Positions 641 through 64,000 of a DNA stretch of 64,000 nt are shown piece by piece. Below the pieces are notes generated by a model. The model made no database searches. It saw only the letters and a list, made by a program, of their open reading frames with translations, and was not told where the DNA came from. This stretch comes from Mobula birostris (Eukaryota): NCBI RefSeq assembly GCF_030028105.1, contig NW_027274690.1, positions 1 to 64,000 of the forward strand, in the 5' to 3' direction. Each line of letters starts with the position of its first letter. Position 1 is the stretch's first letter. The position numbers and the translations under genes are program-made.

Positions 641-1170
641 ATTGGAGTATTGGAGCATTGTCAACAGCTTCGGGGGCCATATATTAGAAAGGATGTGTTG
701 GCATTGGAGAGAGTCCATAGGAGGTTTACGTGGATGATTCCAGAAAGTAAAGGATTAATATATGAGGAGTATTTGCACCGTTGCGCCTGTACTCACTGAA
801 ATTTAGAGGAATGTGGGAGGTCTCATTGAAACCTACCGAATGTTGAAAAGACTTGGTCGGGTAGGTGTGGAGAGGATGTACCCTGTGGTGGGGCTATCCA
901 GAACTAGAGGGCACAGCCTCAAAATTGAGGGGTGACCTTTTAGAGCAGAAGTAAGAATGATTTTTTTTTTCTCCAGAGGGTAGTGAATTTGTGGAATGCT
1001 CTGCCACAGACTGCGGTGGAGGCCAAGCTGTGGGTATATTTAAAGGATGGTCAGGATATGGCAAGAAGACAGGTGTATGGGGTTGAGTGGGATCTGGGAT
1101 CAGCCATGATGGAATGGCAGAGCACACTCGATGGGCTGAATGGCCTCACTGTGCTCCTATGTCTTAAGGT
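641..1170 (+). mobile_element. CR1-type LINE 3' fragment, opposite orientation
   Basis: Degenerate ORF2 C-terminus (RTRGHSLK, NLWNALP). Confidence 0.7.
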
Positions 1171-2395: not shown

Positions 2396-5300
2396 ACATG
2401 AGAACAAAAGAAATAGGAGCAGGAGTCAGCCATCTGGCCCGTCAAGCCTGCTCCGCCATTCAATAAGATTGTGGCTGGTCTGACCACGGACTCATCTCCA
2501 CCTGCCTGCCTTTTCCCCATAAACCTTAATTCCCCTACTATGCAAAAAATCTTAAATATATTTACAGAGGTAGCCTCCACTGCTTCATTGGGCAGAGAAT
2601 TCCACAGACTCACCACCCTCTGGGTAAAGCTGTTCCTTCCCGTCTCCATTATAAATCTACTTCCCTGAATCTTGAGCCTTTCATAATTTCATTATTCTAT
2701 AAGATCTCCTCTTAGTCTTCTGAATTCCAGGGAGTACAGTCCCAGGCGACTCAATCTCTCCTCATAGTCTAACCCCTTCATCTCTGCAATCAATCTGCAC
2801 CACCTCCAAACCCAGTATATCCTTCCTCAAGTAAGGAGACTAGAACTGCACGCAGTATTCCAGGTGCGGTATCTTGTACAGTTGCAGCATAACCTTCCTG
2901 CTCTTAAATTCAACCCCTCTCACAATGAAGGCCAACATTCCACTTGCCTTCTTGATAGCCTCCTGCACTTGCAAACCAACCTTTTGTGATTCATGCACAA
3001 GCACTCCCAAGTCCCTCTGCACAGCAGCATGCTGTAATCTTTCACCATTTAAATAATAATCTGTTCTTTCATTTTTCCTTCCGAAGTAAATAACCTCACA
3101 TTTACCAACGTTGTACTCCATCTGCCAGACCCTTGCCCACTCACTTAACTATTATTTCTCTGCTGACTTTCTGTATCTTCTGCACAATTTGCTTTTCCAC
3201 TCAATTTAGTATCATCAGCAAACTTAGATAAACTACACTCGGCCCCCCTTCCAGATCATGAATGTATATGGTGAACAGTTGTGGGCCCAGCAGTGACCCC
3301 AGCGGCACACCGCTCACCACTGATTGCCAACCAGAGTGACACCCATGTATCCCAACTCTCTGCTTTCTGTTAGTTAACCAACCCTCTGTCCATGCTGATA
3401 CATCACCCCAACTCTATGCATCCTTACCTTATGGATAAGTCCTTTATGCAGCACCTTATCAAATGCCTTCTGGAAATCCAAGCAATCCATGCTGCATCTG
3501 CCTGATGGAACCATTTCTTTCCAGAAGCCTCGCTATTTCTTCTTTAATGATAGCTTCAAGCATTTTCCCAACTGCAGATGTTAAACTAACTGGCTTATAG
3601 TTACCTGCCTTTTGCCTACATCCTTTGTTGAACAGTGGCGTGACATTCGCTGTCTTCCAATCCTCCGGAACCTGCCCAGAATCCACAGAATTTTAGTCAA
3701 TCATCACCAAAGCCTCTACTATAACTTCCGCCATTTCTTTCAGTGCCCTGAGATACATTCCATCAGGACTAGGGGACTTATCTGTCTTCAGGCCCACAAG
3801 TTTGCTCAGCACTACCTCTTTAGTGATAGCTATTGATCGAGGTCATCATCTCCCATCGCATCCATAACATCTCTCTTTGGCACATTAGATGTGTCCTCCA
3901 CCATGAAGACAGGCACAAAAAAGTAATTCAAAGCCAATATCAATTCTCCAAGGGACCTATATTCACTTTAGCCACCCTTAGATAAAAAACGTTTATTATC
4001 TGTTTTTATATTTTGTGCTAGTTTATTTTCATAATATAGCTTCCCTTTCTTTCTTGCTTGCTTAGTGTTTCTTTGTTGCTTTTTAAAGTTTTCCCAAACT
4101 TCCAGTTTCCCATTGTTGCTTTTAACTGGAATATACCTTTGTTGAGCACGTGAAAAATCTCTTTGAAAAGTCTTCCACTGTTCCTCAACCATCCCACCAT
4201 ATAGTCTGTATTCCCGGTCTACACTAGCCAAATCTTCCTTCATCCCATTGTTTAGGCATAACACACTGGTTTTAGATTGCACCCTCTATGTGTGAGAAAT
4301 TCAATCATATGTGAGCACTCTTTCCAAGAGGATCCCTAACTGCAAGATCACTAAAGATAACACGTTCCCTTGTAGGTTCAGTAACATGCTGTTCAAGAAA
4401 GCCATCATGGATGCATACTATGAAGTCCTCCTCAGGACTGCCTCGACCAGCTTGGTTCACCCAATCTATGTGCAAGTTAAAGTCCCCCATGATAACTGCT
4501 GTTCCATTCTGTCATGCCTCAGATATTTATCTGTTTATTGCCTGTGCCACTGTAATGTTGTTATTCGGTGGCTGATAGACAACTCCCGCCAGTGATTTTT
4601 TTCCCTTTACTGTTCCTAATCTCTACCCAAATAGATTCAATGTTCTGCTCCTTAGATCTGATATCGTCTCTCACCATCATCCTGATCTCATCTTTAATTA
4701 AGAGCGCTACCCCACCTCCCTTACCTTCCTGTCTATCCTTCCGTATTACCGGATATCCTTGGATATTTAATTCCCAATCCTCTCCACCCTGCCACCACAT
4801 CTCTGTAACAGCCACTAAATCATACCCCTTTGTACTGATTTGTGCCACACATCACTGACCTTGTTTCGAATACTATGGGCATTCAGACAAAGTGCCCTCA
4901 CACTCACTGTGCTTTTAAATTCTTGTAATCTTTTGCGCTTGACCTTTCTTCACTCCATTCTTACTTTTTTTTAATCTTTTGCCTTTTTCTTTATCTTTAT
5001 TCACACTTTTCTTTTGTACTTTATCCACACTTCTCCAATCTGTTGACCCTCCCCCAATTATTCAGCTTAATGCCCTATCCACAGCCCTAGTTAGCGATTC
5101 GCTGGGATCCAGGCCCCATCCCGGTTCAGGTGGAGCCTGCCCCATTGGTACAGCTTCCTCCTTCCCCAATACTGGTGCCAATTTCCCATGAATTCAAACC
5201 CACTTTTCCCACACCGATCCCTAAGCCACACATTTAATTCTCTAATCTTTTTGACCCTAAACCAATTTGCATGTGGCTCAGGTAGTAATCCAGAGATTGT

Positions 5301-17916: not shown

Positions 17917-40524
<22,608 letters not shown>

Positions 40525-41812: not shown

Positions 41813-44355
41813 GGGGACTGCCGCGGTCGGTGGTGTGGGGGGAGATGCGGGAGTGAAGCTGCGGTGGGTGAGGACAGTCTCCCCGCTGCTGTTGGCTCTG
41901 ACACCCGGGGACTGCCCGCGGTCGGTGGTGTGGGGGGAGATGCGGGAGTGAAGCTGCGGTGGGTGAGGACAGTCTCCCCGCTGCTGTTGGCTCTGACACC
42001 CGGGGACTGCCCGCGGTCGGTGGTGTGGGGGGAGATGCGGGAGTGAAGCTGCGGTGGGTGAGGACAGTCTCCCCGCTGCTGTTGGCTCTGACACCCGGGG
42101 ACTGCCCGCGGTCGGTGGTGTGGGGGGAGATGCGGGAGTGAAGCTGCGGTGGGTGAGGACAGTCTCCCCGCTGCTGTTGGCTCTGACACCCGGGGACTGC
42201 CGCGGTCGGTGGTGTGGGGGGAGATGCGGGAGTGAAGCTGCGGTGGGTGAGGACATGTTCCCGCTGCTGTTGGCTCTGACACCCGGGGACTGCCCGCGGT
42301 CGGTGGTGTGGGGGGAGATGCGGGAGTGAAGCTGCGGTGGGCGAGGACAGTCTCCCCGCTGCTGTTGGCTCTGACACCCGGGGACTGCCCGCGGTCGGTG
42401 GTGTGGGGGGAGATGCGGGAGTGAAGCTGCGGTGGGCGAGGACAGTCTCCCCGCTGCTGTTGGCTCTGACACCCGGGGACTGCCCGCGGTCGGTGGTGTG
42501 GGGGGAGATGCGGGAGTGAAGCTGCGGTGGGCGAGGACAGTCTCCCCGCTGCTGTTGGCTCTGACACCCGGGGACTGCCCGCGGTCGGTGGTGTGGGGGG
42601 AGATGCGGGAGTGAAGCTGCGGTGGGCGAGGACAGTCTCCCCGCTGCTGTTGGCTCTGACACCCGGGGACTGCCCGCGGTCGGTGGTGTGGGGGGAGATG
42701 CGGGAGTGAAGCTGCGGTGGGCGAGGACAGTCTCCCCGCTGCTGTTGGCTCTGACACCCGGGGACTGCCGCGGTCGGTGGTGTGGGGGGAGATGCGGGAG
42801 TGAAGCTGCGGTGGGTGAGGACAGTCTCCCCGCTGCTGTTGGCTCTGACACCCGGGGACTGCCCGCGGTCGGTGGTGTGGGGGGGAGATGCGGGAGTGAA
42901 GCTGCGGTGGGCGAGGACAGTCTCCCCGCTGCTGTTGGCTCTGACACCCGGGGACTGCCCGCGGTCGGTGGTGTGGGGGGGAGATGCGGGAGTGAAGCTG
43001 CGGTGGGCGAGGACAGTCTCCCCGCTGCTGTTGGCTCTGACACCCGGGGACTGCCCGCGGTCGGTGGTGTGGGGGGAGATGCGGGAGTGAAGCTGCGGTG
43101 GGCGAGGACAGTCTCCCCGCTGCTGTTGGCTCTGACACCCGGGGACTGCCCGCGGTCGGTGGTGTGGGGGGAGATGCGGGAGTGAAGCTGCGGTGGGCGA
43201 GGACAGTCTCCCCGCTGCTGTTGGCTCTGACACCCGGGGACTGCCCGCGGTCGGTGGTGTGGGGGGAGATGCGGGAGTGAAGCTGCGGTGGGTGAGGACA
43301 GTCTCCCCGCTGCTGTTGGCTCTGACACCCGGGGACTGCCCGCGGTCGGTGGTGTGGGGGGAGATGCGGGAGTGAAGCTGCGGTGGGTGAGGACAGTCTC
43401 CCCGCTGCTGTTGGCTCTGACACCCGGGGACTGCCCGCGGTCGGTGGTGTGGGGGGAGATGCGGGAGTGAAGCTGCGGTGGGCGAGGACAGTCTCCCCGC
43501 TGCTGTTGGCTCTGACACCCGGGGACTGCCCGCGGTCGGTGGTGTGGGGGGAGATGCGGGAGTGAAGCTGCGGTGGGCGAGGACAGTCTCCCCGCTGCTG
43601 TTGGCTCTGACACCCGGGGACTGCCCGCGGTCGGTGGTGTGGGGGGAGATGCGGGAGTGAAGCTGCGGTGGGCGAGGACAGTCTCCCCGCTGCTGTTGGC
43701 TCTGACACCCGGGGACTGCCCGCGGTCGGTGGTGTGGGGGGAGATGCGGGAGTGAAGCTGCGGTGGGCGAGGACAGTCTCCCCGCTGCTGTTGGCTCTGA
43801 CACCCGGGGACTGCCCGCGGTCGGTGGTGTGGGGGGAGATGCGGGAGTGAAGCTGCGGTGGGCGAGGACAGTCTCCCCGCTGCTGTTGGCTCTGACACCC
43901 GGGGACTGCCCGCGGTCGGTGGTGTGGGGGGAGATGCGGGAGTGAAGCTGCGGTGGGTGAGGACAGTCTCCCCGCTGCTGTTGGCTCTGACACCCGGGGA
44001 CTGCCCGCGGTCGGTGGTGTGGGGGGAGATGCGGGAGTGAAGCTGCGGTGGGCGAGGACAGTCTCCCCGCTGCTGTTGGCTCTGACACCCGGGGACTGCC
44101 CGCGGTCGGTGGTGTGGGGGGAGATGCGGGAGTGAAGCTGCGGTGGGTGAGGACAGTCTCCCCGCTGCTGTTGGCTCTGACACCCGGGGACTGCCCGCGG
44201 TCGGTGGTGTGGGGGGAGATGCGGGAGTGAAGCTGCGGTGGGCGAGGACAGTCTCCCCGCTGCTGTTGGCTCTGACACCCGGGGACTGCCGCGGTCGGTG
44301 GTGTGGGGGGGAGATGCGGGAGTGAAGCTGCGGTGGGTGAGGACAGTCTCCCCGC
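41813..44355. repeat. 95-bp CpG-rich, highly homogeneous tandem array, about 27 copies
   Basis: gggactgcccgcggtcggtggtgtggggggagatgcgggagtgaagctgcggtgggYgaggacagtctccccgctgctgttggctctgacacccg. Confidence 0.96.
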
Positions 44356-46659: not shown

Positions 46660-47316
46660 GTAACCCATCGGTTTAACCCCAGCCTAACTACAACTCACCC
46701 ATTTAACCGCAGCCTAATTACAACCCATCGGTTTAACCCCAGCCTAATTACAACCCACCCATTTAACCCCAGCCTAATTACAACCCATCGGTTTAACCCC
46801 AGCCTAATTACAACCTACCCATTTAACCGCAGCCTAATTACAACCCATCGGTTTAACCCCAGCCTAATTACAACCCATCCATTTAACCCCAGCCTAATTT
46901 CAACCTACCCATTTAACCGCAGCCTAATTACAACCCATCGGTTTAACCCCAGCCTAATTACAACCCATCCATTTAACCCCAGCCTAATTACAACCCACCC
47001 ATTTAACCTCAGCCTAAATACAACCCATTGGTTTAACCCCAGCCTAATTACAACCCATCGGTTTAACCCCAGCCTAATTACAACCCATTAGTTTAACCCC
47101 AGCCTAATTACAACTCACCCATTTAACTGCAGCCTAATTACAACCCATCGGTTTAACCCCAGCCTAATTACAACCCACCCATTTAACCCCAGCCTAATTA
47201 CAACCCACCCATTTAACCCCAGCCTAATTACAACCCATCAATTTAATCCCAGCCTAATTACAACCCATCGGTTTAACCCCAGCCTAATTACAACCCACCC
47301 ATTTAACCCCAGCCTA
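46660..47316. repeat. 30-bp minisatellite, about 22 copies
   Basis: taattacaacccatcggtttaaccccagcc and variants. Confidence 0.93.
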
Positions 47317-50047
47317 CCTCCCAGGACATGTCCTCTTCTCATTGTTACTGTCGGGAGGAGGTACAGGAGCCTGAAGACACACACTCAGCGATTCAGGAAC
47401 AGCTTCTTCCCCTCTGCCATCCAATTCCTAAATGAACATTGAAGTTTTGGACACTACCTCACTTTTTAAAATGATTATTTCAATTTTTGCACAATTTTTA
47501 ATTTAACTGTTTAATATACAATCATATACGGTGTGATTTATTTATTTTTCTAAGTTTTTCACTATATTGTATTGTATTGCTGCACATTGCTCAACGGTTG
47601 CTGATATTAGACCTGATTATGATGCGTCATCGAGGATATCTTCACCGCTGTGCCTGCGTCCATCACTGAAGACCCTCACCACACTGGACTGGCCCTCTTC
47701 TCATCACTACCATGGGTGAGGAGCTACAGGAGCCTGAAGAACCACGCTCAGCAATTCAGGGACAGCTTCTTCCCCTCCGCCATCAGATTTCCGGAAGGAT
47801 AGTGAACCTTTGAACACGGTCTCACTACTGCGCTCTTATTTTGCAATACTCATTTATTTTATACATTCTTAATTGTAATTTGTAAAAGTTTTATGTATTC
47901 TGCTGCATAAAACAACCAATGTCACCTCAGCCAGTGAGCCAGTGATAATAAAGCTGATTCTGACTGTCTTTGTAAAACTCTATTGTATCTCTTTTCTGCT
48001 GTGAATGGGAATTCCAGGGTTGTCTCTGACAATGAACTGAATGTAATATCTGAGTCTCTGGCGAGAGGAATTGACTATGGTCTTCAGGATGGGGACACAC
48101 ACTAGTCCCTTTCCTGGGTGTCAACGTCTCTGAAAATCTACCCTGGGCTCAATCACACCGACGGTATACCAGAGGCCTTCATGGGTACCACCCTCCCTGC
48201 TGGCAAGGATATCTTACCAGCGTCTCTACTCCCTCAGGAGACTGAGGCATGTTCCTCACCACAGAAAGCACCCTGTCCGCATACTTCACATCTCGGTACA
48301 GAGAAAGGTCAGCACATCATGGACTCCACGGACTCTGTCTGCACTTATTGTTGTCTCGGTAAAGTGGCCAGCGTCATTAAAGACCCTCCCCCCACCCCGG
48401 ACGTTCCCTCTTCTCCCCACTCCCATTGGGCAGAAATACGTAGCACTGGGCTCAAGGAGTTGTTAGACTATTGCAGAATGCCCTGGAACGCCAGCCTCAA
48501 GTTAACATTTTCTGTCTTTAAAACTGTAGAGATTCACACTGATAAATGAAACAATGCTCCTCTGGACCAAGGTGCACAACACAGTACCTATACCTCACAC
48601 ACAACACATCGTAATATTACCACGAACAAATCCACAAATAATAAGGTGCAATTATGACAGTTTACACGACGAGACCTGGGTGTTGGCAGGGAGTTCAGGG
48701 AGGAGAAGCTGTTTCCCACCCTATCAGTCCTTGAACACACACAAAGTCTTGGAGGAACTCAACAGGTCAAGCAGCATGAACAGATAGTCCACGTTTCAAG
48801 TTGAGACCTTTCTTCAGGACTGAGAAGGAAGGGGGAAGACGCCAGAATAAAAAGGCAGGGAAGAAGGGAAGGAGGCTAACTGAAGGTGATCGGTGAAGGT
48901 AGGTGGGTGGGAAAGGTCAAGGGCTGGAGAAGAAAGAATCTGACAGGACAGGAGACTGAACCATAGAAGAAAGGGAAAGAGGAGGGGTCCCGGGGGAAGT
49001 AATAGGCAGGTGAGAAGAGGTAACAGGTCTGAGGGGGGAACAGAGGAAGGGGAGGAGGGTGGAAAGGGGAGTTTTTTCCTGGAAGGAGTAATCAATATTT
49101 GTACCATCAGGCTGAAGTACCCAGACGGAATACAAGGCATTGCTCCTCGACCCTCTGCTCGGCACAAGGTGATGCTACTGCTATGGTACCTCCTGCCTGA
49201 CAGTAGTGGGTCAACGTGATTGTTAAGGCCTTGCACCTTCTTGTCTGCCTGCACTGCACTCTCTTTTAACAGTGACACTTTATTCTGCACTCTGTAGTTG
49301 TTCTGCCTCAGTGTCTTACGGCCTGTATAATGATCTGATCGGTATGAACAGAGTGCAAGACATTTTTCGCCGTATCTCCATACATGTAACAACAATAAAC
49401 CAATCTGCCAAATGGCCTCAAGAAGGCAGCATCCATAACTGAGGCCCCTCATCACCCTGGGCATGACCTCTCCTCACTGCTCCCCTCAGGGAAGAGGAAC
49501 AGGGGTTCAGGAACAGTTTCTTCTCCTGCACCATCTGATTTCTGCATGAACACCACTGGAATTTGTGGTATTTTTTGACAGTACTGCTGTTGCATACAAT
49601 CTACTTCACGACACTTGTCAATGAAAACAAACCTGATTCTCATTTAAAAGTTGGTGGTGCATGCTGCTCTCAAGTCCAATGTTGTTTCAGACAAAAATGA
49701 AGCCCAACTGACCATTTAGCCTCTCCAGTTAACAAAAGATGATTCTCCCCATAATCATTAGCGTAATCCACCCTGTGATTCTCCCCTTACCAATGAACCT
49801 ATCAATCTCAGCCTTAAATGCACCCAAGAATTTGGCTTCCACAGCCACCAACGGCAACAAATTCACCACCCTTCAGCTGAACAAATTCCTCCCTGTCTCC
49901 GTTCCAAATGGAGGTCCATTTTTCCTGAGGCTGTATCATTGGATCATGGTCTTTCCCATTGTTGGAGATATTCTCTCCACATCCACTCCACCCTTGGGTT
50001 TTCAGTGAGACCTGAACCACACATGTGACATCTGTTCAAAGGTGGGT

Positions 50048-50540
50048 GAGGAGGGAGATTCCCTCTGTGTCTGACCCCGGGAGTGTGTGATGGGACGGTG
50101 CGGAGGGAGTTTCACTCTGTATCTGACTCCAGGAGTGCGTGATGGGACGGTGTGGAGGGAGATTCACTCTGTGTCTGACCCCGGGAGTGTGTGATGGGAC
50201 GGTGTGGAGGGAGTTTCACTCTGTGTCTGACCCCGGGAGTCTGTGATGGGACGGTGTGGAGGGAGATTCACTCTGTGTCTGACTCCAGGAGTGCGTGATG
50301 GGACGGTGTGGAGGGAGATTCACTCTGTGTCTGACCCCGGGAGTGTGTGATGGGACGGTGTGGAGGGAGCTTCACTCTGTGTCTGACCCCCGGAGTGTGC
50401 GATGGGACGGTGTGGAGGGAGCTTCACTCCGTGCCTGACCCCGGGAGTGTGTGATGGGACGGTGTGGAGGGAGTTTCATTCCGTGTCTGACCTCGGGAGT
50501 GTGTGATGGGACAGTGTGGAGGGAGTTTCACTCAGTGTCT
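50048..50540. repeat. 52-bp satellite, array upstream of MAZ
   Basis: ctctgtgtctgaccccgggagtgtgtgatgggacggtgtggagggagattca, about 9 copies. Confidence 0.95.
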
Positions 50541-51460: not shown

Positions 51461-54328
51461 GAAGGGACATTACGGCGATAAGGGGTGGGGCTAGAGGGAG
51501 GGGCAAGGGTGTGGGATGGGGCTAGAGGGAGGGGGCAGGGGTGTGGGGTGGGGCTAGAGGCAGGGGGTAGGGGTGTGGGGCTAGAGGGAAGGGGTGTGGG
51601 GTGGGGTTACAGGGAGGGGGCAGGGTGCGGGGTGTGGCTAGAGGGAGGGGGCGGGGGTGTGGGGTGGGGCGAGAAGGGGCAGGGGTGTGAGGGTGGGACT
51701 ACAGGGTAGGGGTGTGGGGTGGGGCTACGGGGAAGGGGCAGGGGTGTGAGGGTGGGACTACGGGGAAGGGGCAGGGGTGTGGGTGGGGCTAGAGAGAAGG
51801 GGTGTGGGGTGGGGCTACAGGGAAGGGGCAGGGGTGTGGGGTGGGGGTAGAGGAGTGAGGCTTTGTGAGGAGGGACAGAACCACCAGGGTGGGGCAGGAC
51901 TACCAGCGAGCCTGCAGAAGGGGTTAGGGGGCTGAGTGAGGGTCTGAGGGGTGAGCATGGCCCACCAGCCCATGGGGATTTAAGGGAGGGTGGGTGTGGC
52001 CTGAGTTGTTGGGGCACTGTGATTGGCTGCTGGGCTTGAAGGGCGGGAACTGAGCCATGAGTGACACAATAGGTGACCAGTGCGAGAGGCAGAGACACTG
52101 GTGACTGACGGACTCGGGAGGACATATTGGGTAGGGTACTGGCATTTCAGGAACTGTGGGGCGCTGGATTAGCCTGTTCGAACTTCAACAGGGTTGTCTA
52201 TCATTGGACTAGGGGTAAAAGAATGAAAGGTTAGGGATCAAAGGTCCAGAGATGAGCGTTTGAGCATTTAGGGTCGAGGGGGCAGCGGGTGGAATGTTGA
52301 GAGGTGAGGGTGAACAGTAAAGTGTAGGATTGAAGTGAGGGGTCAAATGTCAGAGGTGAGGGGTTAGGCAGTGAGGACGAAGGCAGAGATGTGGAGAGCA
52401 GAGAGGCTGGCGTCAGGGGCGAGGGTGCAGGGTACGAGGGTTAAGATGTGTAGGGGTTGAAGGGTGGAGAGGACGGTTGAGGGGTTAGGGGTCAGTGGGT
52501 CGAGATGAGAAGCTGAGAGGTGGGGTGCTCAAGGATTAAGAGGCTGGTGTTGAGAGATTTGGCTCCTGGCGGGGTTGAGGAGTGGGAGGTGTTGGGGGGT
52601 GGTGAAATGTAAAAATGCCACTCACTCCTCCATATTGCTCCTTGTATCCCTCACCCCACCTTTCTCCCCAAATCCCTCCACCCCCCACTCCCTATACACA
52701 ACAGCCGACCTCATCTGATACTCCCACAACTCTTCAGCCTGACTTTCTTCCCATCCTGGGCTCCCCCCCAGAGGAAGGGGCAGCCCCCCCTCCAGCACCT
52801 CCTCCTCCTGCACCCAGTGCACCGGCTCCGGGACAGGATGAGGAGGGAAGGGGCGGGACACCGGAGGCAGCCCCCACACCCCGCTCCCGCCCACGGGGCC
52901 CCTTCATCTGCCCCCTCTGCGGGAAGCACTTCAAGAACAGCTACAACCTGAGGCGTCACCAGGGGACCCACCGAGCAGGGGCCAGGAGGGCCCCCACCTC
53001 CTCGCCCTCCTCCCCCACCACCCCCAGCCCCCCTCCCCGGCCGCCCAGGAAGGAGCACAGCTGTGAGCTCTGCGCCAAGGCATTCCGCGATGTCTACCAC
53101 CTGAACCGTCACCGCCTCTCGCACTCGGACGAAAAGCCCTTCGAGTGCCCCGTCTGCCAGCAGAGGTTCAAACGCAAGGACCGCATGAGCTACCACGTCC
53201 GCTCGCACGAGGGCGGCGTGCACCGGCCCTACGGCTGCAGCCACTGCGGCAAGGGCTTCTCCAGGTGAGGGGGAGGCAGAGGGGGCAGAGAGGGAGGGGA
53301 GAGAGAGGAGGGAAGTGGAGGGGAGAGGGGAGGGGAGGGGAGAGGAGAGGGGAGAGTGGAGCGGAAGGGAGGGGAGTGGAGGAAGGGAGGAGAGGGGGAG
53401 AGGAGGAGAGCGTGGAGGGGGAGATGGGGCAGTGAGGGGGAGGGGAGGAAGTGTGCAAGGGAGAGGGGGAGGGGAGAGTTGAGAAGGGAGGGAGAGGAGG
53501 GAGTTGAGAAGGGAGGGAGAGGAGGGGTGAGGGGGAGTGTGACGGAGGAAAGGACGGGGAGGTGGAGGGAGAGGAGGAGGAGGAGGGAAAGGATGAGAGG
53601 TGATGGCGAGGGAACACAGTGTGAGAGAGGCACTGGTGCTATACTGACCCAATGGCTGCAGCCACTGTGACACGATTCTCCGGGAGTATCTGAGGTACTG
53701 GGGGGGGGGGGGTGGAGAAGGGGCAGAGGGTGAAGGTGAGGAAAGGGAGAGGCGGAAGTGGGTAACGGAGGATGTGGCCATGTGGGATTATTTTGGACAT
53801 TTACCTTTACTTGTTCCCTCCCCCACCCCAAACCAACCCCCCTCACCATCGGCTCTGTTCCAGACCCGACCACCTCAATAGTCACATCCGGCAGGTCCAC
53901 TCGACAGAGAGACCCTTCAAGTGTCAGGTAGGGTGAAAGCGGCAATGGGAGGGGGGTCCAGATGGAGGAATGGTGGGAGGGGGAACATAGAGGAAGGGAA
54001 GCTGTGCATAGCTTGGGAATATGCCATTATCTGACACTCCCCCCCCACTCCCCCTCCCCACCTCTCTGTCCCTCCCTCTCTCCTCCTCCCCCCACTCCCC
54101 CACTTCCCCTGTCTCACTTCCCCCCCCTTCCCCACCATCCCCCCACCCCTGGACAGACATGTACAGCTGCGTTTGCCACGAAGGACCGTCTCCGGGCCCA
54201 CATGATCCGACACGAAGAGAAGGTCCCATGTCACGTCTGTGGGAAACTACTGAGTGCAGCTTACATCACCGACCACATGAAGGTTCACAATGACAGCCCC
54301 AATCACACATGTGACATCTGTAACAAAG
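51188..54328 (+). CDS. MAZ: Myc-associated zinc finger protein, exons 1-4 (3' end outside window)
   Basis: Exons 51188-51220, 52705-53264, 53864-53927 and 54157-54328 join in frame. C2H2 fingers include KAFRDVYHLNRHRLSHSDEKP, RFKRKDRMSYHVRSH, RPDHLNSHIRQVHSTERPFKC and FATKDRLRAH. The N-terminus MDAAWSSFIF and adjacency to TAOK2 favour MAZ over VEZF1. Confidence 0.88.
52705..53264 (+). CDS. MAZ: MAZ exon 2 (Pro-rich region, ZF1-3, start of ZF4)
   Basis: Part of ORF 52615-53268, acceptor acaacag, donor AG|GTGAGG. Confidence 0.88.
53864..53927 (+). CDS. MAZ: MAZ exon 3 (PDHLNSHIRQVHSTERPFKCQ)
   Basis: 64 nt, ctgttccag acceptor, GTAGGG donor. Confidence 0.9.
54157..54328 (+). CDS. MAZ: MAZ exon 4 (TCTAAFATKDRL...HTCDICNK)
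   Basis: 172 nt, GT-AG, zinc fingers. Confidence 0.9.
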
Positions 54329-54334
54329 GTGGGT

Positions 54335-54781
54335 GCGGAGGGAGATTCACTCTGTGTCTGACCCCGGGAGTGTGTGATGGGACGGTGTGGAGGGAGATTC
54401 ACTCTGTGTGTCACCCCGGGAGTGTGTGATGGGACGGTGTGGAGGGAGATTCACTCTGTGTCTGACCCCGGGAGTGTGTGATGGGATGGTGTGCAGGGAG
54501 CTTCACTCTGTGTCTGACCCCGGGAGTCTGTGATGGGACGGTGTGGAGGGAGTTTCACTCTGTGTCTGACCCCGGGAGTGTGTGATGGGACGGTGTGGAG
54601 GGAGTTTCACTCTGTGTCTGACCCCGGGAGTGTGTGATGGGACGGTGTGGAGGGAGTTTCACTCTGTGTCTGACCCCGGGAGTGTGTGATGGGACGGTGT
54701 GGAGGGAGCTTCACTCTGTGTCTGACCCCGGGAGTGTGTGATGGGATGGTGTGGAGGGAGATTCACTCTGTGTCTGACCCC
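54335..54781. repeat. 52-bp satellite, MAZ intron 4, left of the Tx1 element
   Basis: Same unit, about 8.5 copies, starting within a few nt of the exon 4 donor. Confidence 0.95.
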
Positions 54782-54883
54782 TTTTTTTTTTAACAAAATT
54801 CTTTATTACAAATGTCGGTGCTGTACAATATTTACAAAACCAGTGACTAACACATTTACTACACTACAAACAGACAATACATG

Positions 54884-57800
54884 TTAAACCAATATATTAC
54901 CATCCTCATCAATGATGGCATTTACACCCCGCGGAGCCCAATGGTCCCGGAACACCTCTACGGTCGCCGTGGACTGTGCGTATTCCTTTTCAATGTTCAC
55001 CTAGGCACGAACATACCCCCTAAACATAGCCAGGCAGTCTGCCCGGGGAGAACCTCCTGCCACCCTTTTCCAGGAGCCACGGATGGCAATTTTCGCCAGC
55101 CCCAGGAGCAAGTTGACAAGGACATCCTCATCCCTCTGTGCCCCCCTCCTTGCTGGATGACCATATATGAATAGGGTGGGACTGAAATGCAACCAGAAGG
55201 CAAGAAGCAGCCCACGCAAATACGCGAAAAGGGGCTGCAGTCTCGCGCACTCCATGTACATATGGTACACGGTCTCCTCCAGCCCGCAGAAGTGACACGT
55301 GGCTGGGAGATCTGTGTACAGACTAAAGAACTTATTGCAGGGCACCGCTTTGTGCAGCACCCTCCAGCCAAGATCCCCAAGGTGCATGGGGAGGACTCCC
55401 TTGTAAAGGTACTTCCATTGGGGCCCCCCCTCACCTCCAGGTGGGAAGACCGACCGCCATGGCGTGTCAGGACGGTGGACAAATGCTAGGAAGTGGAGGG
55501 TGTGGAGCAGCAGCCCATAAAGGTACCTCCTGCCTGCATCCCTGAATGGGATTGTGGGTGTCGATGAGAGACGGCTCAAGTTGTGTGGATTCGTCTCTCG
55601 GGTAAGGCTGCGGGGCCTGGGCCCGACGAGCAGCTCAGCCCGAGTCGTTCCACACACCCGAGCCGCACCGACATCCGTTGAGACAGGGCAAGGTTCGGCC
55701 AGGACCCCGCCCTCTGCCAGAGGAGGGGATTCCCGGCCTGAGGCAACCATGTTCCAGACTCTCAGTAGGTCCTGATAGAAGCCGGGCAGCCTCTGCAAAG
55801 CAGCACGGCTGACGCCCGCCGGTGGTAGCTGCATATCTTCGGCAAGACAGCAGCCCCTCCGGAGGAAGAAAGTCGCCAACACGTGCCACCTGGGAGGGTG
55901 CTCGGCTTACAGGAATCTCTGCAGCGTCCTGAGGCAGAGAGCCGCCAGTCGTGTGCGTACACACACCAGCGACTGACCGCCTTCTCCTACTGGGAGACTC
56001 AGAACCGCTGCAGAGACCCAGTGTTTCCTGTTTCCCCAGAAGAAGTCCACTAGCTTCCTCTGCATTCTCGCGACAAAAGGGGCGGGGGGGGGCCAAGGTG
56101 ACCATCCGGTACCACAACATGGAGGCCACCAGCTGGTTTATGACCACCACCCTCCCTCGATAGGAAAGCACCCTGAGAAGGCCTGACCAGTGCCCTAGCC
56201 GGGCCATGACCTTTGTCTCCAGGTGCTGCCAGTTCGCCAGCCAGGCCTCCCCAGAAGGACTCAGGTAGACTCCCAGATAGAGAAAGCGTCTGGTGCTCTA
56301 ATCAAAAGCTCTCATCTCCTCTGGCAGGGAGTCCACCTGCCACTGGCCTACTAAGAGTCCGGAACATTTCGCCCAGTTGGTCCTCGCGGAGGATGCCGCC
56401 GAGAAAACATCTTGGCACTCGCGCATCCTCCGCAGGTCACAGGGGTCTGTCATCATGAGGAGTATGTCATCGGCGTAGGCCGAGAGGACGACCCCCATGT
56501 CCGGTTTGCGCAGAACCAGACCTGTCAGCCTTCGCCGAAGAAGGCTGAGGAATGGCTCGACACAGATCGCATACAGTTGACCGGACATGGGGCACCCTTG
56601 ACGCACTCCTCTTCGGAAGCGGATATGTCCTGTCAATGATCCGTTAATCTTAACTAGGCACTTTGCGGCAGAGTACAGGAGCCGAACTCGGGCCACAAAG
56701 TGTGGTCCGAGCCCAAAAGCCTGCAGGGTGCCCACCAGGAAACTGTGGTCCACCCGGTCAAAAGCCTTCTCTTGGTCAAGAGAAAGAAACGCTACCGGGG
56801 TCCCAGTCTCCTGGAGTAGATGGATCAGGTCCCGTACTAGGTGGACATTGTCCTGGATGGAGCGGCCCGGGACTGTGTAAGATTGGTCAGGATGGACCAC
56901 CTGTCCAATTACCGAACCCAGATGGTTGGCCATTGCCCGGGCGAAGATCTTGTAGTCCGCGCACAAGAGGGAGACCGGCCGCCAGTTCTTTAGCAGGCGG
57001 AGGTCTCCCTTCTTGGGCAGTAGGACCACAACAGCTCTTCGCCATGAGAGGGGCATTTCTCCGGTGGCTAGGCTCTCCCCTAGGACAAGGCTGTAATCAT
57101 CCCCCAGGACATCCCAAAAAGCCTGATAAAACTCAACACTCAGTCCATCCAAACCAGGGGACTTGCCCCTCCGGAGTTGCCGAAGGGCAGTAGACAGTTC
57201 CTCCCGAGTCAGGGGGGCATCCAGACGCACTGCGTCCTCTGGGCTGACCTTAGGCAAATCCTTCCAGACCTCATTACACGCCTCCGCATTTGACGGATCA
57301 GGCGAGAATAAGGACCGATAGAATGAACGGACCTCGTTGTTAATTCCATCAGGGTCCGTGATGGAGGAGCCATCGGCAGCCTGCAGCTCCACTAGCTGCT
57401 TTTGAACTCCCCGCCACCGTTCCAACGAGTAGAAGAAGGGTGAGCCACGGTCCAAATCCTGCAGCATTTGGATCCGTGACCTCACGTACGCACCTTGGGA
57501 CTGCTGGAGCTGCAGGTTCCTTAGTGCGTCCTTCTTCTCCTGGTATTCCTGCCACAGCTGCTGGTCTCCGGCGGTCGGACCAAGGCGGGACTCCAGGTCA
57601 AGCAACGCTCTCTCAAGCCGCTCAACCTCAGAGCTCCGCCTCTTTGCTCAAGCCGCTCAACCTCAGAGCTCCGCCTCTTTGTCGACCCCCTAGTGTACTC
57701 CCGACATAAAAACCGGATGTGGGCTTTGCCCACATCCCACCATAGCCGTAGGGAGCAGAACTCTCTCCGCCTCTCCTTCCAGGAGACCCAGAAAGCTCGG

Positions 57801-58582
57801 AACGAATCCCGGAATCGGCTGTCCTCCAGCAGCCGGTTGTTAAAATGCCAATACCCGGATCCCACCCGAGGGTGTAGTGGAATAAATTCTATCCACACAA
57901 GGTGGTGGTCTGAGCACGACACCGGCCGCATGGAGGACGCCGACACGCGGGAGACGTAGGCCCGAGAGATGTAAAAGCGGTCTATCCTGGAACCTCCTTC
58001 TCTAGACCTTCTCGAGAAGGCGCTAGAGTTGGGGTGAAAATTCCGCCAGCTGTCCACCAAGTCAAAGGAGCCGACTAGCTCCTTTAACTTTTTTGCTGAT
58101 GCTGGGTCGCGTTGGAGGCCCGAGCAGTCCTCCGCCTCGAGGGTACAATTGAAATCTCCCCCGAGGATGACGCAATCCCCAGGATCGATGGAGCTCAGCA
58201 GGGTGGACAGCTGACAGAATAGGCGCGTCTGCATCACACCGCGCCTGGGAGCATACACATTGATAAAATGCAATGGTACGCCATCCAGGCGCACAACCAG
58301 GTGGAGCAGACGGCCGGGCACAACGTCCTGGACTCTTTCAATTACTGGCTGGAAGGTCGGGGCCAACAGGATCGCCACCCCGCTAGAAATGGAGCTGAGG
58401 TGGCTCATGTAGACCCCACCCCGCCACTCCAGGAGCCAAGCAGACTTGTCCCCAGGGATGGTATGGGTTTCCTGCAGGAAACTCACCGTATACCACCCAT
58501 CCCTGAGGGCTGAGAGATTGTTATGCCTGCGAAGTGGACCCCTGCTGCCGTTTACGTTGAGACTAGCTATGGTAAGCTTCAT
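54884..58582 (-). pseudogene. Tx1 ORF2: AP endonuclease + reverse transcriptase + C-terminal CCHC, disrupted
   Basis: Motifs SLNVNG, LQETH, GGDFN, SDHH; WRPVSLL, LDQEKAFD, GVRQGCPMS, YADD; CHFCGLEETVYHMYMEC. Disrupted by a 35-bp duplication, a G-run frameshift and premature stops. Confidence 0.9.
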
Positions 58583-58594
58583 GGCGGGAGCACA

Positions 58595-60631
58595 CTAGGT
58601 CTCAGCAGCTGTGCCCATTTCGGTGAGAGCGGAGGCGCCCTCCATCACACTGTCCGGAAAGAAAACAAGGTTACTTTTTGCTTTCTGGGCTCGAGCGGTA
58701 CCAGCGACACCCTGTGACCCGCCATCCCCCATTGGAGCGAGGCTGCTTCTCCCTCTGATGTCCCTTACTAGGTCATCTAGGAAAGATTTTAGTTGTCGTC
58801 TGTCGTTCCCCGACACCGCATTCCTCTTTCCCTTTCCCTTTCGTCCGAGGATGACTCGCAGGGACCTCACCAGCCTCGGCATGCTGGGCCAGCGTAGCGA
58901 GGCTAGTTGACGCCGGTGCTTGGCACCCTCAGAGGTGAGAATAAAGTGCTTAATTTCCTCTACAGGTATCAATGGGGACTTCTCAGGAGGGGGCGAGGAT
59001 ATCCATTATTTCACTATCGAAAGAGTCCCCCTCCAACCCGTCACTGCAGACAGAATCCCCATCGGCCTCCCCGCATGTTCCAATAGATGGCTGCGCTTGT
59101 GACCCATACCGCGCAGCGGGCACCTCGCTCTCACCTGCCCGCTCCACCGTCGCATCAGCCTCATCCACATTTGCGACAGTGGAGGGACAATCTCCAGGGA
59201 CTCCCTGCAAGTCATTAATTGCTGGGGTCGACGTGCACAGAAAATCGCCCTCCCCAGGGGGCAGGCATAGAGGGGAACCCGGCACCTTTGGTCCAAGGGA
59301 TTCACAAGCAGCCTGGTGCTGAGAATGAGAGAGCTTTGTCTCGTCTCCTCTTACACTATTGGGTACACTGGCCTCCAGAGAGGCGCTGACTTGTAGGTCC
59401 TGGGTGGAGGCCTCCAGGGCTGCCTCATTTGTGCAAACAGGGCTATCACAAGCTTTTTGCACAACCACACCATCTTCCCCAGGACTGGTGGCTACATCTG
59501 GGGACTCAGGTTTCGAACCAACCCCTACCCGGATTCCCACCCCTTCCTGGGACTCCCCCGCATCTACATCCCCTGCCCTCTTGCGGGAACGTTCCCTTCT
59601 CCTCTTCACGCCGGAGGAGCACACAGGTGCAGGCTTCACCGATGGGGCGGCGCTCTCTGTTTCCATCGCCCTGTCTGCTTGCGCACCTCCCCGAGCCTCG
59701 CGCTCCACTTCAGGCGAAATGGGCGTGAGCTCTGCAGCCTCAAAGGCCCGCTTCTTACTGTGTTTGGATTTCCCCTTTGCCTTCTTACTCCGCACAGACT
59801 CCACCCCGTCCCCCACCTGAACCATAGGGAGAGGAGCAGGGACCGACCCAACCGTAGGAGTAGGGGCAGGGTGAGGGGCTGGGGCAGGATCACGGGCGGG
59901 GGCAGGGTCAGATGCAGGCGCAGACGCACGCGCAGGAGTAGGATCGGGGCAGAGGTAGCTGGGGCACTGGTGCCCGAAGTGGGCTCCCTCGGGTTCCGGG
60001 CGGCAGGACAGTCCCTCCGAAAGTGCCCCACCCCCCTGCACGCATGGCACCGTGGGCGCTCGGAGCTCCAGTATACCTGATAATCCACTCTCTTGTGCCG
60101 GACAGTAAACCGGCCCTCAACATCGTCCTCCCTTTCCAGCTGCATGAATACCTGACGCCGGAAAGAGATTACGGTGCGGAGGGTGCGTCTCTTAAATTTG
60201 TGTCGGATGGCAGTGATCTCCGACCTTACTTGCCCTAAACGGGCCAGTGGGGGAAGCAAGTCCTCATTTGGAATGAAAGGCTTAACATGCCCAAGCACGA
60301 TACGTTGTGTGGGGGCCGTCACCAGCTCCATAGGTAAAAAGATGTTGTCTACCGTGACTCCCCTGCTTAGGGCCCGGTGCACTAGCTCTTCATTCACCAG
60401 GTAGAACACTGCCTTTCCGAACTCCTTCTCGGTGGCCAGAATACCACCTTTCCCCACAAGGTCCTCCATTGCCTCCACACACTTTTCTAGTGTCATTCCA
60501 GGGCGCAAAATACATTGCACCCCACGTTCCACCTTCACCGACCGAAACAGGGCGTTGTCCGAGGCCGGGGAGGCAGCCGCCCTTGCGTAACTCCCCGAAG
60601 GCACGCGACTCCCTGGAGACCGGTCCGGCAT
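58595..60631 (-). pseudogene. Tx1 ORF1 (Gag-like, CHACRGVGHFRRDC knuckle), frameshifted
   Basis: Split over ORFs 59636-60631, 58983-60050 and 58595-58972 in different frames. Confidence 0.8.
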
Positions 60632-61141
60632 GCTGGCGCTCTTTCCAGTCCGAGAATCCTACAGCGGTGCCGGTTAGAAGTCCTGGAACGAGTCGAATAC
60701 CTGGCCGGGAAAGTTTGCAGTCGACAGTTCCTCGCTGGCTCGGCGCCAGGAAAGGCTCCGTCGGACTTGCAGAGACCCAGGCCGGGAGAGGCCGAAACGT
60801 CCTTCCAGATGCTCCGGCACCAACACCGGACGAAAATCAGGAAAACAATGGAGGAGGAACGTTGCCCCGATGTCAATGGGGGAACGACGGCGTTTGCCTC
60901 CGGTTTTGGAGCGAACCGGCTTCCTGGTGAGTTGCCAGCAGCCGCAGCTGGGAGCTACGCAGTTAGCAGCCGCCGACAAACCCAGCCCAAACCGGCAGTA
61001 AAACTGCACACCGAGTTTCCACACCAGCACCGTCACTCACTCGGTTGTCCAAGAGACTTTTAGAGCCACCTCCAAAGTATTCCACGAACTTTATCCAGTA
61101 GTTTTGCCTCGATTTCTCCCAGCTCAGTCAGCACAGGTCCT

Positions 61142-64000
61142 CTCTGTGTCTGACCCCGGGAGTGTGTGATGGGACGGTGTGGAGGGAGTTTCACTCTGCG
61201 TCTGACCCAGGAGTCTGTGATGGGACGGTGTGGAGGGAGATTCTCTGTTTCTGACTATGGGAGTGTGTGATGGGACGGTGTGGAGGAAGATTCACTCTGT
61301 GTCTGACCCCGGGAGTGTGTGATGGGACGGTGTGGAGGGAGATTCACTATGTGTCTGACCCCGGGAGTGTGCGATGGGACGGTGTGGACGGAGCTTAACT
61401 CTATGTCTGACCCCGGGAGTGTGCGATGGGACGGTGTGGACGGAGCTTCACTCTGTGTCTGACCCCGGGAGTGTGTGATGGGACGGTGTGGAGGGAGCTT
61501 CACTCTGTGTCTGACCCCGGGAGTGTGTGATGGGACGATGTGGAGTGTGTTTCACTCTGTGTCTGACCCTGGGAGTGTGTGATGTGAAGGTGTGGAGGGA
61601 GTTTCTCTCCTGTGTCTGACCCCGGGAGTGTGTGATGGGACTTTGTGGAGGGAGTTTCACTCTGTCCCTGACCCCGGGAGTGTATGATGGGACGGTATGG
61701 AGGGAGATTCACTCTGTGTCTGACCCCGGGAGTGTGTAATGGGACTTTGTGGAGGGAGTTTCACTCTGTCCCTGACCCCGGGAGTGTGTGATGGGACGGT
61801 GTGAAGGGAGCTTCACTCTTGTGTCTGACCCCGGGAGTGTGTTATTGGACGGTGTGGAGGGAGATTCACTCTGTGTCTGACCCCGGGAGTTTGTGATGGG
61901 ACGGTGTGGAGGGAGCCTCACTCTGTGTCTGACGCTGGGAGTGTGTGATGGGACGGTGTGAAGGGAGCTTCACTCTGTGTCTGACGCCGGGAGTCTGTGA
62001 TGGGACGGTGCGGAGGACGTTTCACTCTGTGTCTGACCCCGGAAGTGTGTGATGGGACGGTGTGAAGGGAGCTTCACTCTGTGTCTGACCCCGGGAGTGT
62101 GTGATGGGACGGTGTGGAGGGAGATTCACTCTGTGTCTGCCCCCGGGAGTGTGTGATGGGACGGTGTGGAGGGAGATTCACTATGTGTCTGACCCCGGGA
62201 GTGTGCGATGGGACGGTGTGGACGGAGCTTCACTCTGTGTCTGACCCCGGGAGTGTGTGATGGGACGGTGTGGAGGGAGATTCACTCTGTGTCTGCCCCC
62301 GGGAGCGTGTGATGGGACGGTGTGGAGGGAGCTTCACTCTGTGTCTGACCCCGGGAGTGTGTGATGGGACGGTGTGGAGGGAGTTTCACTCTGTGTGTCT
62401 GACCCCGGGAGTGTGTGATGGGACGGCGTGGAGTGAGATTCACTCTGTGTCTGAACCCGGGAGTGTGTGATGGGACGGTGTGGAGGGAGATTCACTCTGT
62501 TTCTGACCCCGGGAGTGTGTGATGGGACGGTGTGGAGGGAGTTTCACTCTGTGTGTCTGACCCCGGGAGTGTGTGATGGGACGGCGTGGAGGGAGATTCA
62601 CTCTGTGCCTGACCCCGGGAGTGTGTGATTGGACGGTGTGGAGGGAGATTCACTCTGTGTCTGACCCCGGAAGTGTGTGATGGGACGGTGTGGATGGAGC
62701 TTCACTCTGTGTCTGAGCCCGGGAGTGTGTGATGGGACGGCGTGGAGGGAGATTCACTCTGTGTCTGACCCAGGGAGTGTGTAATGGGACGGTGTGGAGG
62801 GAGATTCACTCTGTGTCTGAGCCCGGGAGTGTGTAATGGGACGGTGTGGAGGGAGATTCACTCTGTGTCTGACCCCGGGAGTGTGTGATGGGACGGTATG
62901 GAGGGAGATTCACTCTGTGTCTGACCCCGGGAGTGTGTGCTGGGACGGTATGGAGGGAGATTCACTCTGTGTCTGACCCCGGGAGTGTGTGATGGGACGG
63001 TATGGAGGGAGATTCACTCTGTGTCTGCCCCCGGGAGTTTTTGATGGGACGGTGTGGAGGGAGATTCACTCTGTGCCTGAAGCCGGGAGTGTGTGATGGG
63101 ACGGTGTGGAGGGAGTTTCACTCTGTGTCTGACCCCGGGAGTGTGTGATGGGACGGTGTGGAGGGAGCTTCACTCTGTGTCTGGCCCCGGGAGTGTGTGA
63201 TGGGACGGTGTGAAGGGAGCTTCACTCTTGTGTCTGACCCCGGGAGTGTGTTATTGGACGGTGTGGAGGGAGATTCACTCTGTGTCTGACCCCGGGAGTT
63301 TGTGATGGGACGGTGTGGAGGGAGCTTCACTCTGTGTCTGACGCCGGGAGTGTGTGATGGGACGGTGTGAAGGGAGCTTCACTCTGTGTCTGACGCCGGG
63401 AGTCTGTGATGGGACGGTGCGGAGGGCGTTTCACTCTGTGTCTGACCCCGGAAGTGTGTGATGGGACGGTGTGAAGGGAGCTTCACTCTGTGTCTGACCC
63501 CGGGAGTGTGTGATGGGACGGTGTGGAGGGAGATTCACTCTGTGTCTGACCCCCCAAGTGTGTGATGGGACGGTGTGAAGGGAGCTTCACTCTGTGTCTG
63601 ACCCCGGGAGTGTGTGATGGGACGGTGTGGAGGGAGATTCACTCTGTGTCTGCCCCCGGGAGCGTGTGATGGGACGGTGTGGAGGGAGCTTCACTCTGTG
63701 TCTGACCCCGGGAGTGTGTGATGGGACGGTGCTGAGGGAGTTTCACTCTGTGTCTGACCCCGGGAGTGTGTGATGGGACGGTGTGAAGGGAGCTTCACTC
63801 TGTGTCTGACCCTGGGAGTGTGTGATGGGACGGTGTGGAGGGAGTTTCACTCTGTGTGTCTGACCCCGGGAGTGTGTGATGGGACGGCGTGGAGGGAGAT
63901 TCACTCTGTGTCTGAACCTGGGAGTGTGTGATGGGACGGTGTGGAGGGAGATTCACTCTGTTTCTGACCCCGGGAGTGTGTGATGGGACGGTGTGGAGGG
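61142..64000. repeat. 52-bp satellite, MAZ intron 4, right of the Tx1 element, running off the window
   Basis: Same unit, more than 50 copies. Confidence 0.96.

What the first reader, a model, noticed from the sequence alone, without database searches (positions are those of the whole stretch)
54766..61157. Full-length Tx1 retrotransposon inserted at a defined site in a 52-bp satellite: candidate satellite-targeting element
Seen: the 6.36-kb element splits the satellite. The left array stops at ...ctctgtgtctgacccc and goes straight into poly(T). The right array restarts at ctctgtgtctgacccc rather than gggag, so repeat phase shows a 16-bp TSD. The priming nick falls at CCCC^GGG, the centre of a CCCGGG palindrome, with no T-tract to pair with poly(A), unlike the L1 TTTT/AA preference. 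Known: many Tx1-clade elements have sequence-specific AP endonucleases targeting multicopy DNA (U2 snRNA, tRNA arrays, 5S rDNA, microsatellites, other transposons). Inference: this family may home to the 52-bp satellite, a target I do not recognise as described.
Basis: partly seen in the sequence, partly recalled or inferred. Interest (0 to 1): 0.82.

Follow-up and report, generated by a model that had tools for sequence, protein, structure and literature searches.

The report
Dead Tx1 LINE inside ray satellite
A broken but full-length copy of a Tx1-type jumping gene sits at a cleanly duplicated site inside a 52-base repeat in a ray gene's intron; whether its family aims at that repeat could not be tested here, and such aiming is already known for this group.

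Summary
A 6,360-bp non-LTR retrotransposon lies on the minus strand at 54782-61141. It has a 10-nt poly(A) tail and an exact 16-bp target-site duplication (54766-54781 = 61142-61157). It splits a 52-bp satellite.

It is a Tx1-clade element. Its RT piece is 60% identical over 432 aa to Xenopus Tx1 ORF2, and it falls in a 100%-supported clade with that founder. The copy is dead: ORF2 has two frame changes and three in-frame stops.

The priming nick is at CCCC^GGGAG, with no T to pair with poly(A).

The key claim, that the family homes to this satellite, could not be tested:
- The protein collections hold no close copies.
- Four DNA scans found nothing.
- In the one read-laying run, satellite contigs hid the junction.
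- That call did show one contig, from a related organism, joining the same 3' end to a non-satellite flank.

This scan noted the same arrangement before on other DNA of this genome (s1-145241, s1-895810, s1-896454). Those notes are leads only.

Satellites are already listed among Tx1 targets (PMC4494074). Verdict: probably a new member of a known kind; moderate interest.

The parts
54332..54781 (+). Left part of the 52-bp satellite array (8.7 units); it begins a few bases after a zinc-finger exon's splice donor
   Evidence: TRF; sequence; flank reading
54766..54781 (.). Left copy of the 16-bp target-site duplication, CTCTGTGTCTGACCCC. Its 3' end on the + strand is the inferred primer for reverse transcription
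   Evidence: 16 of 16 positions identical to 61142-61157
54782..61141 (-). Whole Tx1-clade LINE copy, 6,360 bp
54782..54791 (-). Poly(A) tail, 10 nt (read as T10 on the + strand)
54792..54883 (-). 3' UTR of about 92 nt, with an AATAAA signal at 54802-54807
54884..58582 (-). ORF2, collinear with Xenopus Tx1 ORF2 residues 1-1292 and broken. Frame changes lie near 57599-57641 and 56076-56089. In-frame stops lie at 56298-56300, 55907-55909 and 55001-55003. The natural stop is at 54884-54886
   Evidence: tblastn; translation
57599..58582 (-). Apurinic-type endonuclease domain. The catalytic motifs are present. The hairpin loop before SRIDR is 4 residues shorter than in Tx1L
   Evidence: Pfam E 6e-18; human L1 ORF2p E 5.5e-20; 44% identity over 336 aa to Xenopus Tx1; alignment
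56076..57641 (-). Reverse transcriptase domain
   Evidence: Pfam RVT_1 E 2.3e-37; 60% identity over 432 aa to Xenopus Tx1; tree
58595..60631 (-). ORF1 region, split over at least two frames (59636-60631, 58983-60050, 58595-972). A weak CCHC knuckle lies at residues 194-209 of the first piece
61142..61157 (.). Right copy of the 16-bp target-site duplication
61142..64000 (+). Right part of the 52-bp satellite array (54.9 units); it runs off the window
   Evidence: TRF

Best explanation
This is a dead copy, complete in extent, of a LINE from the Tx1L lineage of the Tx1 clade. It entered one unit of a 52-bp satellite by target-primed reverse transcription. Shown: the element's endonuclease nicked the window's + strand at 5'-...GTCTGACCCC^GGGAG-3', and the C-3'OH primed cDNA synthesis directly on the poly(A) tail with no T:A pairing. 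The other strand was cut 16 bp away, which gave the 16-bp duplication. The copy has since decayed: it differs from the common reading at about 2% of places and carries two frame changes and three stops in ORF2. Inferred, not shown: the family's endonuclease prefers this site of the satellite unit, as many Tx1 families prefer one repeated target. The preference is probably not absolute. Each unit offers one such site per strand, and the orientation seen here would be the preferred one.
For: Anatomy and duplication. Tx1L lineage: the RT piece is 60% identical over 432 aa and the EN piece 44% over 336 aa to the protein UniRef names 'Transposon TX1 uncharacterized 149 kDa protein', Xenopus laevis. 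In the RT tree the window pairs with P0084 (98) and is sister to Xenopus Tx1 plus sea-turtle rows (98), within a 5-row clade at 100. Human L1 ORF2p scores only 146 bits. Clade habit: passages of PMC4494074 say many Tx1-clade elements show target preference, and its figure 3 legend lists satellites as targets. Passages of PMC1950540 say Tx1L-EN nicks almost only its own site and that the hairpin loop helps read DNA. The window's loop differs from Tx1L's: it is 4 residues shorter with a different tip. The nick site has no T or A. The unit holds only one YYYY^RRR step per strand. The satellite is a very abundant multicopy target: the first bin has depth 3.1 million in X1 against 11-131 thousand for the element bins. 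Leads only, not support: notes s1-145241, s1-895810, s1-896454 and s1-145548.
Against: Only one copy was examined, and no count of flanks was possible. The satellite fills 3,805 of 57,624 non-element bases of the window (6.6%) and is very abundant in the reads, so a chance hit is not unlikely. One contig of run X14, from a related organism, joins the same 3' end to a non-satellite flank (table 7). Only 1 of about 73 units here is occupied, although 44 carry an exact GACCCCGGGAG. The family is very abundant (25,205 and 20,833 contigs laid in X1 and X4), which fits a generalist as well.
Confidence: 0.5

Rival explanations
1. Chance insertion. The family has no preference for the satellite. This copy landed in, or survived in, an abundant and harmless repeat inside an intron, and it looks special only because the repeat makes the duplication easy to read.
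For: The satellite is 6.6% of the window's non-element bases and has by far the greatest depth in the laid reads. The family is very abundant. One X14 contig shows a non-satellite flank. Only 1 of about 73 units is occupied.
Against: The element sits in the Tx1L lineage, whose founder is strictly site-specific. The nick at CCCC^GGGAG is unlike a relaxed L1-type site. Unchecked scan notes report the same arrangement in three other pieces of this genome.
Confidence: 0.3
2. Short-motif preference. The endonuclease likes a short G+C-rich pyrimidine-to-purine step such as CCCC^GGG wherever it occurs. The satellite is hit often only because every unit carries one such step, and many copies lie elsewhere.
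For: The nick falls at the only YYYY^RRR step on the + strand of the unit. In the X14 contig the nicked strand also ends in a C/T run...CCACCTCTC. That flank is G+C-rich and not satellite.
Against: The minus strand has a near-mirror step, TCCC^GGG. A short-motif enzyme should use both orientations, and nothing here shows whether it does. This rests on two junctions only.
Confidence: 0.15
3. The '16-bp duplication' is really a 36-bp target deletion, or a later unequal exchange in the array. The second-strand cut would then not be 16 bp away.
For: In a 52-bp tandem array, +16 and -36 give the same repeat phase. No variant site inside the 16-mer can tell the two apart.
Against: Duplications of 7-20 bp are the usual outcome of this insertion mechanism (general knowledge). 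The two copies are identical at 16 of 16 positions, and both junctions are clean.
Confidence: 0.05

Closest known systems
Tx1L of Xenopus laevis, founder of the Tx1 clade
   Same: The ORF2 layout is the same: apurinic-type endonuclease, RT, then a C-terminal zinc-binding part. ORF2 is collinear over residues 1-1292. Identity is 60% in the RT and 44% in the EN, and both fall in the same 100%-supported clade. Tx1L also inserts into a repeated target (passages of PMC1950540).
   Different: The target differs. Tx1L goes to one site in the DNA transposon Tx1D, while this copy lies in a 52-bp satellite. The hairpin loop of the endonuclease is 4 residues shorter and has a different tip. Specificity is shown by experiment for Tx1L and is not shown here.
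Tx1 families with satellite or microsatellite targets: Kibi at (TC)n, Koshi at (TTC)n, crocodilian families at (TTCC)n/(TTTC)n, and the families marked 'Sat' in figure 3 of PMC4494074
   Same: They are Tx1-clade elements that sit in tandem repeats, which is the kind of target proposed here.
   Different: Here the unit is a 52-bp G+C-rich satellite and the host is a ray. I could not see which families carry the 'Sat' label, because the figure and the supplements are not held. Those families met a count of flanks (over 20%); this one has not been counted.
Human L1
   Same: It has the same domain order and the same insertion mechanism, with a poly(A) tail and a duplication of similar length. Its EN and RT are recognisably related (E 5.5e-20 and 9.9e-42).
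   Different: L1 nicks at TTTT/AA and can pair the T-run with poly(A). Here the nick is CCCC^GGGAG and no pairing is possible. The ORF1 here has no match to the L1 ORF1 families in Pfam.

Membership tests
Tx1 clade of non-LTR retrotransposons | The RT groups with Tx1L in an RT phylogeny | tested here: met
   The RT piece is 60% identical over 432 aa to Xenopus Tx1 ORF2. In the tree of 31 rows, the window plus P0084 (98) is sister to Xenopus Tx1 plus two sea-turtle rows (98), in a clade at 100. Limit: no labelled L1-clade row was in the tree. Human L1 ORF2p was compared by score only (146 bits).
Tx1 clade of non-LTR retrotransposons | An apurinic-type endonuclease at the N-terminus of ORF2 | tested here: met
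   Exo_endo_phos E 6e-18 over residues 6-226. The catalytic motifs are present in the alignment.
Tx1 clade of non-LTR retrotransposons | ORF1 with a CCHC zinc knuckle (feature recalled, from no call) | tested here: inconclusive
   zf-CCHC scores 20.1 bits against a cut-off of 20.8. No L1-type ORF1 family matched. No Tx1 ORF1 reference was at hand.
Target-specific Tx1 family (criterion of PMC4494074) | One type of sequence occurs in more than 20% of the flanks of the family's copies | not testable with these tools
   Only 1 copy was seen in the window. Other copies could not be fetched. One non-satellite junction was seen in X14.
Target-specific Tx1 family (criterion of PMC4494074) | Independent copies lie at the same nucleotide in the same orientation | not tested
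   Only an unchecked note (s1-145241) claims this for two copies elsewhere. I could not compare its site with CCCC^GGGAG.
Target-specific Tx1 family (criterion of PMC4494074) | The endonuclease nicks the target site in vitro | not testable with these tools
   This is a bench test. It was done for Tx1L according to passages of PMC1950540.
L1 clade proper | A relaxed TTTT/AA nick site that can pair with poly(A) | tested here: not met
   The nick is at CCCC^GGGAG, with no T or A at the junction. This is one copy only.

The most novel reading that the evidence does not exclude
A Tx1L-lineage family of mobulid-type rays has retargeted its endonuclease, through a shortened DNA-reading hairpin loop, to a G+C-rich site (CCCC^GGGAG) in a very abundant 52-bp satellite. 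It primes on poly(A) without any base pairing, and it has spread to thousands of copies inside that satellite, including arrays that begin at intron starts of genes. That would be a natural, high-copy example of retargeting in the lineage where endonuclease specificity was first dissected.
Probability: 0.4. Interest if true: 0.5.

Novelty: new member of a known kind. Interest (0 to 1): 0.35.

Why it matters
If the preference is real, this family would pair a close relative of Tx1L with a quite different G+C-rich target. Tx1L is the element whose endonuclease specificity has been tested at the bench. Comparing the two endonucleases, starting with the hairpin loop, would then show how target choice shifts in this lineage. 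It would also help explain why this satellite and this LINE are both so abundant in these rays. If the preference is not real, this is an ordinary nested insertion of a dead LINE in an intron repeat.

Tried and rejected
Routes to other copies:
- Protein route. Searches with the C-terminal piece (58 hits, best 54% identity) and the RT piece (773 hits, 120 listed, best 67%) found no copy of this family. The search of all representatives (best 57-67%) found none either.
- DNA route. A 25-base 3'-end pattern gave 0 matches in metagenome, viral and genome contigs. A 31-base satellite pattern gave 0 matches in metagenome contigs.
- Reads. The single read-laying run included 82 bases of satellite. 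Satellite contigs filled the tables of joints and loose ends, 631 loose-end rows and 47,030 pieces were not shown, and contigs that bridge the junction could not be seen. Run X21 laid nothing.
- Earlier findings searched by sequence gave nothing.

Other steps that led nowhere:
- The satellite matched no Rfam family, so I dropped the idea that it derives from a small-RNA gene.
- Cluster names (1 of the 22 listed members carries a name, 'hypothetical protein') and the Atlas did not help to name the clade.
- I looked in the window for the non-satellite flank seen in X14 and found 0 matches.
- I considered and rejected an L1-clade reading on the nick site and scores.
- I considered a second, older copy in the window; blastn found only the element itself.

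Literature limits:
- The original Tx1L papers are not held. What I say of them comes from passages of PMC1950540 and PMC4494074.
- The supplements of PMC4494074 (its target tables) and figure 3 itself could not be seen. They may name satellite-targeting families.
- Print check: searches (6 papers; 9; 6; 0; 15; 3) listed no paper on a Tx1 element in a ray satellite. I saw listings and abstracts, plus passages of five papers. Repbase cannot be searched here.
Full report
WHAT IS THERE. The + strand reads satellite up to ...CTCTGTGTCTGACCCC at 54781. Ten T follow (54782-54791), then unique sequence. At the other end unique sequence stops at 61141, and the satellite restarts with the same 16 bases at 61142-61157, followed by GGGAG. 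The two 16-mers agree at 16 of 16 positions, and the next base outward differs from the satellite, so the duplication is exactly 16 bp. TRF finds the same 52-bp unit at 50045-50540 (9.5 copies), 54332-54781 (8.7 copies) and 61142-64000 (54.9 copies). blastn of the insert against the whole window returned only the insert itself (1 row), so the window holds one copy.

THE ELEMENT. On the minus strand the 6,360-bp insert has these parts:
- a 510-nt leader;
- an ORF1 region with a weak CCHC knuckle (20.1 bits against a cut-off of 20.8);
- an ORF2 with an apurinic-type endonuclease (Exo_endo_phos, E 6e-18), a reverse transcriptase (RVT_1, E 2.3e-37) and a weak zf-RVT match;
- an AATAAA signal 10 nt before a 10-nt poly(A) tail.

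tblastn with Xenopus Tx1 ORF2 maps residues 1-334, 307-827, 823-955 and 1051-1292 in order onto 58582-54902. The reading frame changes near 57599-57641 and near 56076-56089. In-frame stops lie at 56298-56300, 55907-55909 and 55001-55003. The natural stop is at 54884-54886. The copy is therefore complete in extent but dead. Laid against contigs of three public runs, it differs from the common reading at 108, 124 and 131 of 6,000 places in X1, X4 and X14, mostly by transitions (table 1). That is about 2%.

WHICH CLADE. The protein collections hold nothing close. The best identities were 54% for the C-terminal piece (58 hits), 67% for the RT piece (773 hits, 120 listed) and 57-67% among representatives. 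A bridging search with the nearest full-length representative (P0181) brought in a protein that UniRef names 'Transposon TX1 uncharacterized 149 kDa protein' of Xenopus laevis (P0344). To it the window's RT piece is 60% identical over 432 aa (533 bits), the endonuclease piece 44% over 336 aa, and the C-terminal piece 44% over 211 aa. Human L1 ORF2p scores 146 bits with the RT piece and 75 bits with the endonuclease piece.

In a maximum-likelihood tree of 31 RT rows, the window pairs with an unnamed ENA protein (P0084, support 98). That pair is sister to Xenopus Tx1 plus two sea-turtle proteins (98), in a five-row clade at 100. The zebrafish 'pol-like protein' and the alligator protein named TX1 lie in another group. 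The rows were my own choice of 30 proteins, and no labelled L1-clade row was available.

HOW IT GOT THERE. The + strand carries flank, then T10, then the antisense of the element. So the + strand's ...GACCCC-3'OH primed reverse transcription on the poly(A) tail. The first nick was therefore at 5'-GACCCC^GGGAG-3'. This is shown by the junction, assuming no untemplated bases. No T or A lies there, so priming needed no pairing with poly(A). This is unlike the TTTT/AA site of L1 described in passages of PMC1950540. The second cut was 16 bp away on the other strand, which is inferred from the duplication. By repeat phase alone, a 36-bp deletion would look the same. The consensus unit has one YYYY^RRR step on the + strand, the one used, and a near-mirror TCCC^GGG on the minus strand.

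DOES THE FAMILY AIM AT THE SATELLITE? This is the heart of the finding, and I could not test it. The routes I tried are listed under Tried and rejected. What the reads call did show:
- The family is very abundant in two organisms: 25,205 contigs were laid in X1 and 20,833 in X4.
- The bin that holds the satellite has a summed depth of 3.1 million in X1, against 11-131 thousand for the element bins. The tool warns that these sums are not copy numbers.
- In run X14, one contig joins the element's 3' end (from 54783) to a flank that is not the satellite, through a T-run broken by one C. Two of the six X14 loose ends listed end in GATC. I take X14 for a GATC-cut reduced library, so this may be a single locus (inference).
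- Contigs that bridge the satellite-element junction, if there are any, were not visible. 631 loose-end rows and 47,030 pieces were not shown.

In the window the satellite makes up 3,805 of 57,624 non-element bases (6.6%). 44 units carry an exact GACCCCGGGAG, and 1 of about 73 units is occupied. On my own evidence, the case for homing rests on three things: the clade's habit, the unusual nick site, and the kind of target. The case against rests on n = 1, the abundance of the satellite, and one non-satellite junction.

WHAT IS KNOWN. Passages of PMC4494074 say that many Tx1-clade elements show target preference:
- Tx1 inserts into Tx1D.
- Keno inserts into U2 genes.
- Kibi and Koshi insert into (TC)n and (TTC)n.
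- Crocodilian families insert into a Mariner, other transposons or (TTCC)n/(TTTC)n.

[quoted passage not shown] The legend of its figure 3 lists 'Sat, satellites' among known targets. Passages of PMC4640811 name the Tx1 clade as one of three groups that hold most target-specific families. Passages of PMC1950540 say that Tx1L-EN nicks almost only at its own site. They also say the hairpin loop between two beta strands, with RDGH at its tip in Tx1L, lies where it can read the DNA. In my alignment the window's loop is 4 residues shorter and has a different tip. That fits a different target, but it is inference only.

A preprint on manta and devil ray genomes (10.64898/2026.10.27.761883, passages) reports LINEs at about 29% of those genomes and does not contain the term Tx1. 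Six searches listed no paper on a Tx1 element in a ray satellite.

EARLIER NOTES OF THIS SCAN (leads, not evidence). Three other pieces of this genome carry first-reader notes of a Tx1 LINE in a 52-bp satellite (s1-145241, s1-895810, s1-896454). The follow-up on s1-145241 reports two independent insertions at one nucleotide and files them as a likely new member of a known kind. The follow-up on s1-145548 says half of the fetched copies of a Tx1 lineage sat in a short satellite. I could not see their sequences, so I do not know whether their site is the one seen here. The statement that the genome is of a manta-type ray also comes only from such notes.

SETTING. The bases just left of the array (54172-54324) read as a C2H2 zinc-finger exon (weak Pfam matches) that ends in AAAG|GTGGGT. 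The array begins a few bases after that splice donor. The element therefore lies antisense in this gene's intron.

VERDICT. This is most likely a new member of a known kind: a Tx1L-lineage family with a possible preference for a ray satellite. The homing claim is at about even odds until the flanks of other copies are counted.

Noticed in passing
The left edge of the upstream array at 50045 carries a 45-bp copy, 91% identical, of that exon/intron junction. The array edge was therefore duplicated together with about 30 bases of exon.
   Followed up: partly
run X14, laid at window 54783 (table 7): A contig of a related organism joins the same element 3' end, through a T-run broken by one C, to a G+C-rich flank that is not the satellite and is not found in this window (0 matches).
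   Followed up: partly
window 100-648 and 3516-3830, minus strand: Two further RT-like stretches, 26-30% identical to Tx1-type RTs: remains of other, unrelated LINEs.
   Followed up: no
window 25306-34885, 41813-44355, 46662-47316, 20079-21112: Four other large tandem arrays: a 49-bp unit with 196 copies; a 95-bp unit with 27 copies at 98% matches; a 30-bp unit with 22 copies; a 45-bp unit with 23 copies. The window is unusually rich in minisatellites.
   Followed up: no
runs X2, X5, X6, X8, X12, X16, X18: Seven runs guessed to be RNA hold 0.30-0.38 of the element's sampled words, about as much as the DNA runs. The family may be transcribed, or these runs may really be DNA.
   Followed up: no
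window 54700-60699 against runs X1 and X4 (table 2): Summed depth falls only about 2-fold (X1) to 5-fold (X4) from the 3' to the 5' part of the element. That is a mild 5' truncation bias for a LINE family.
   Followed up: no
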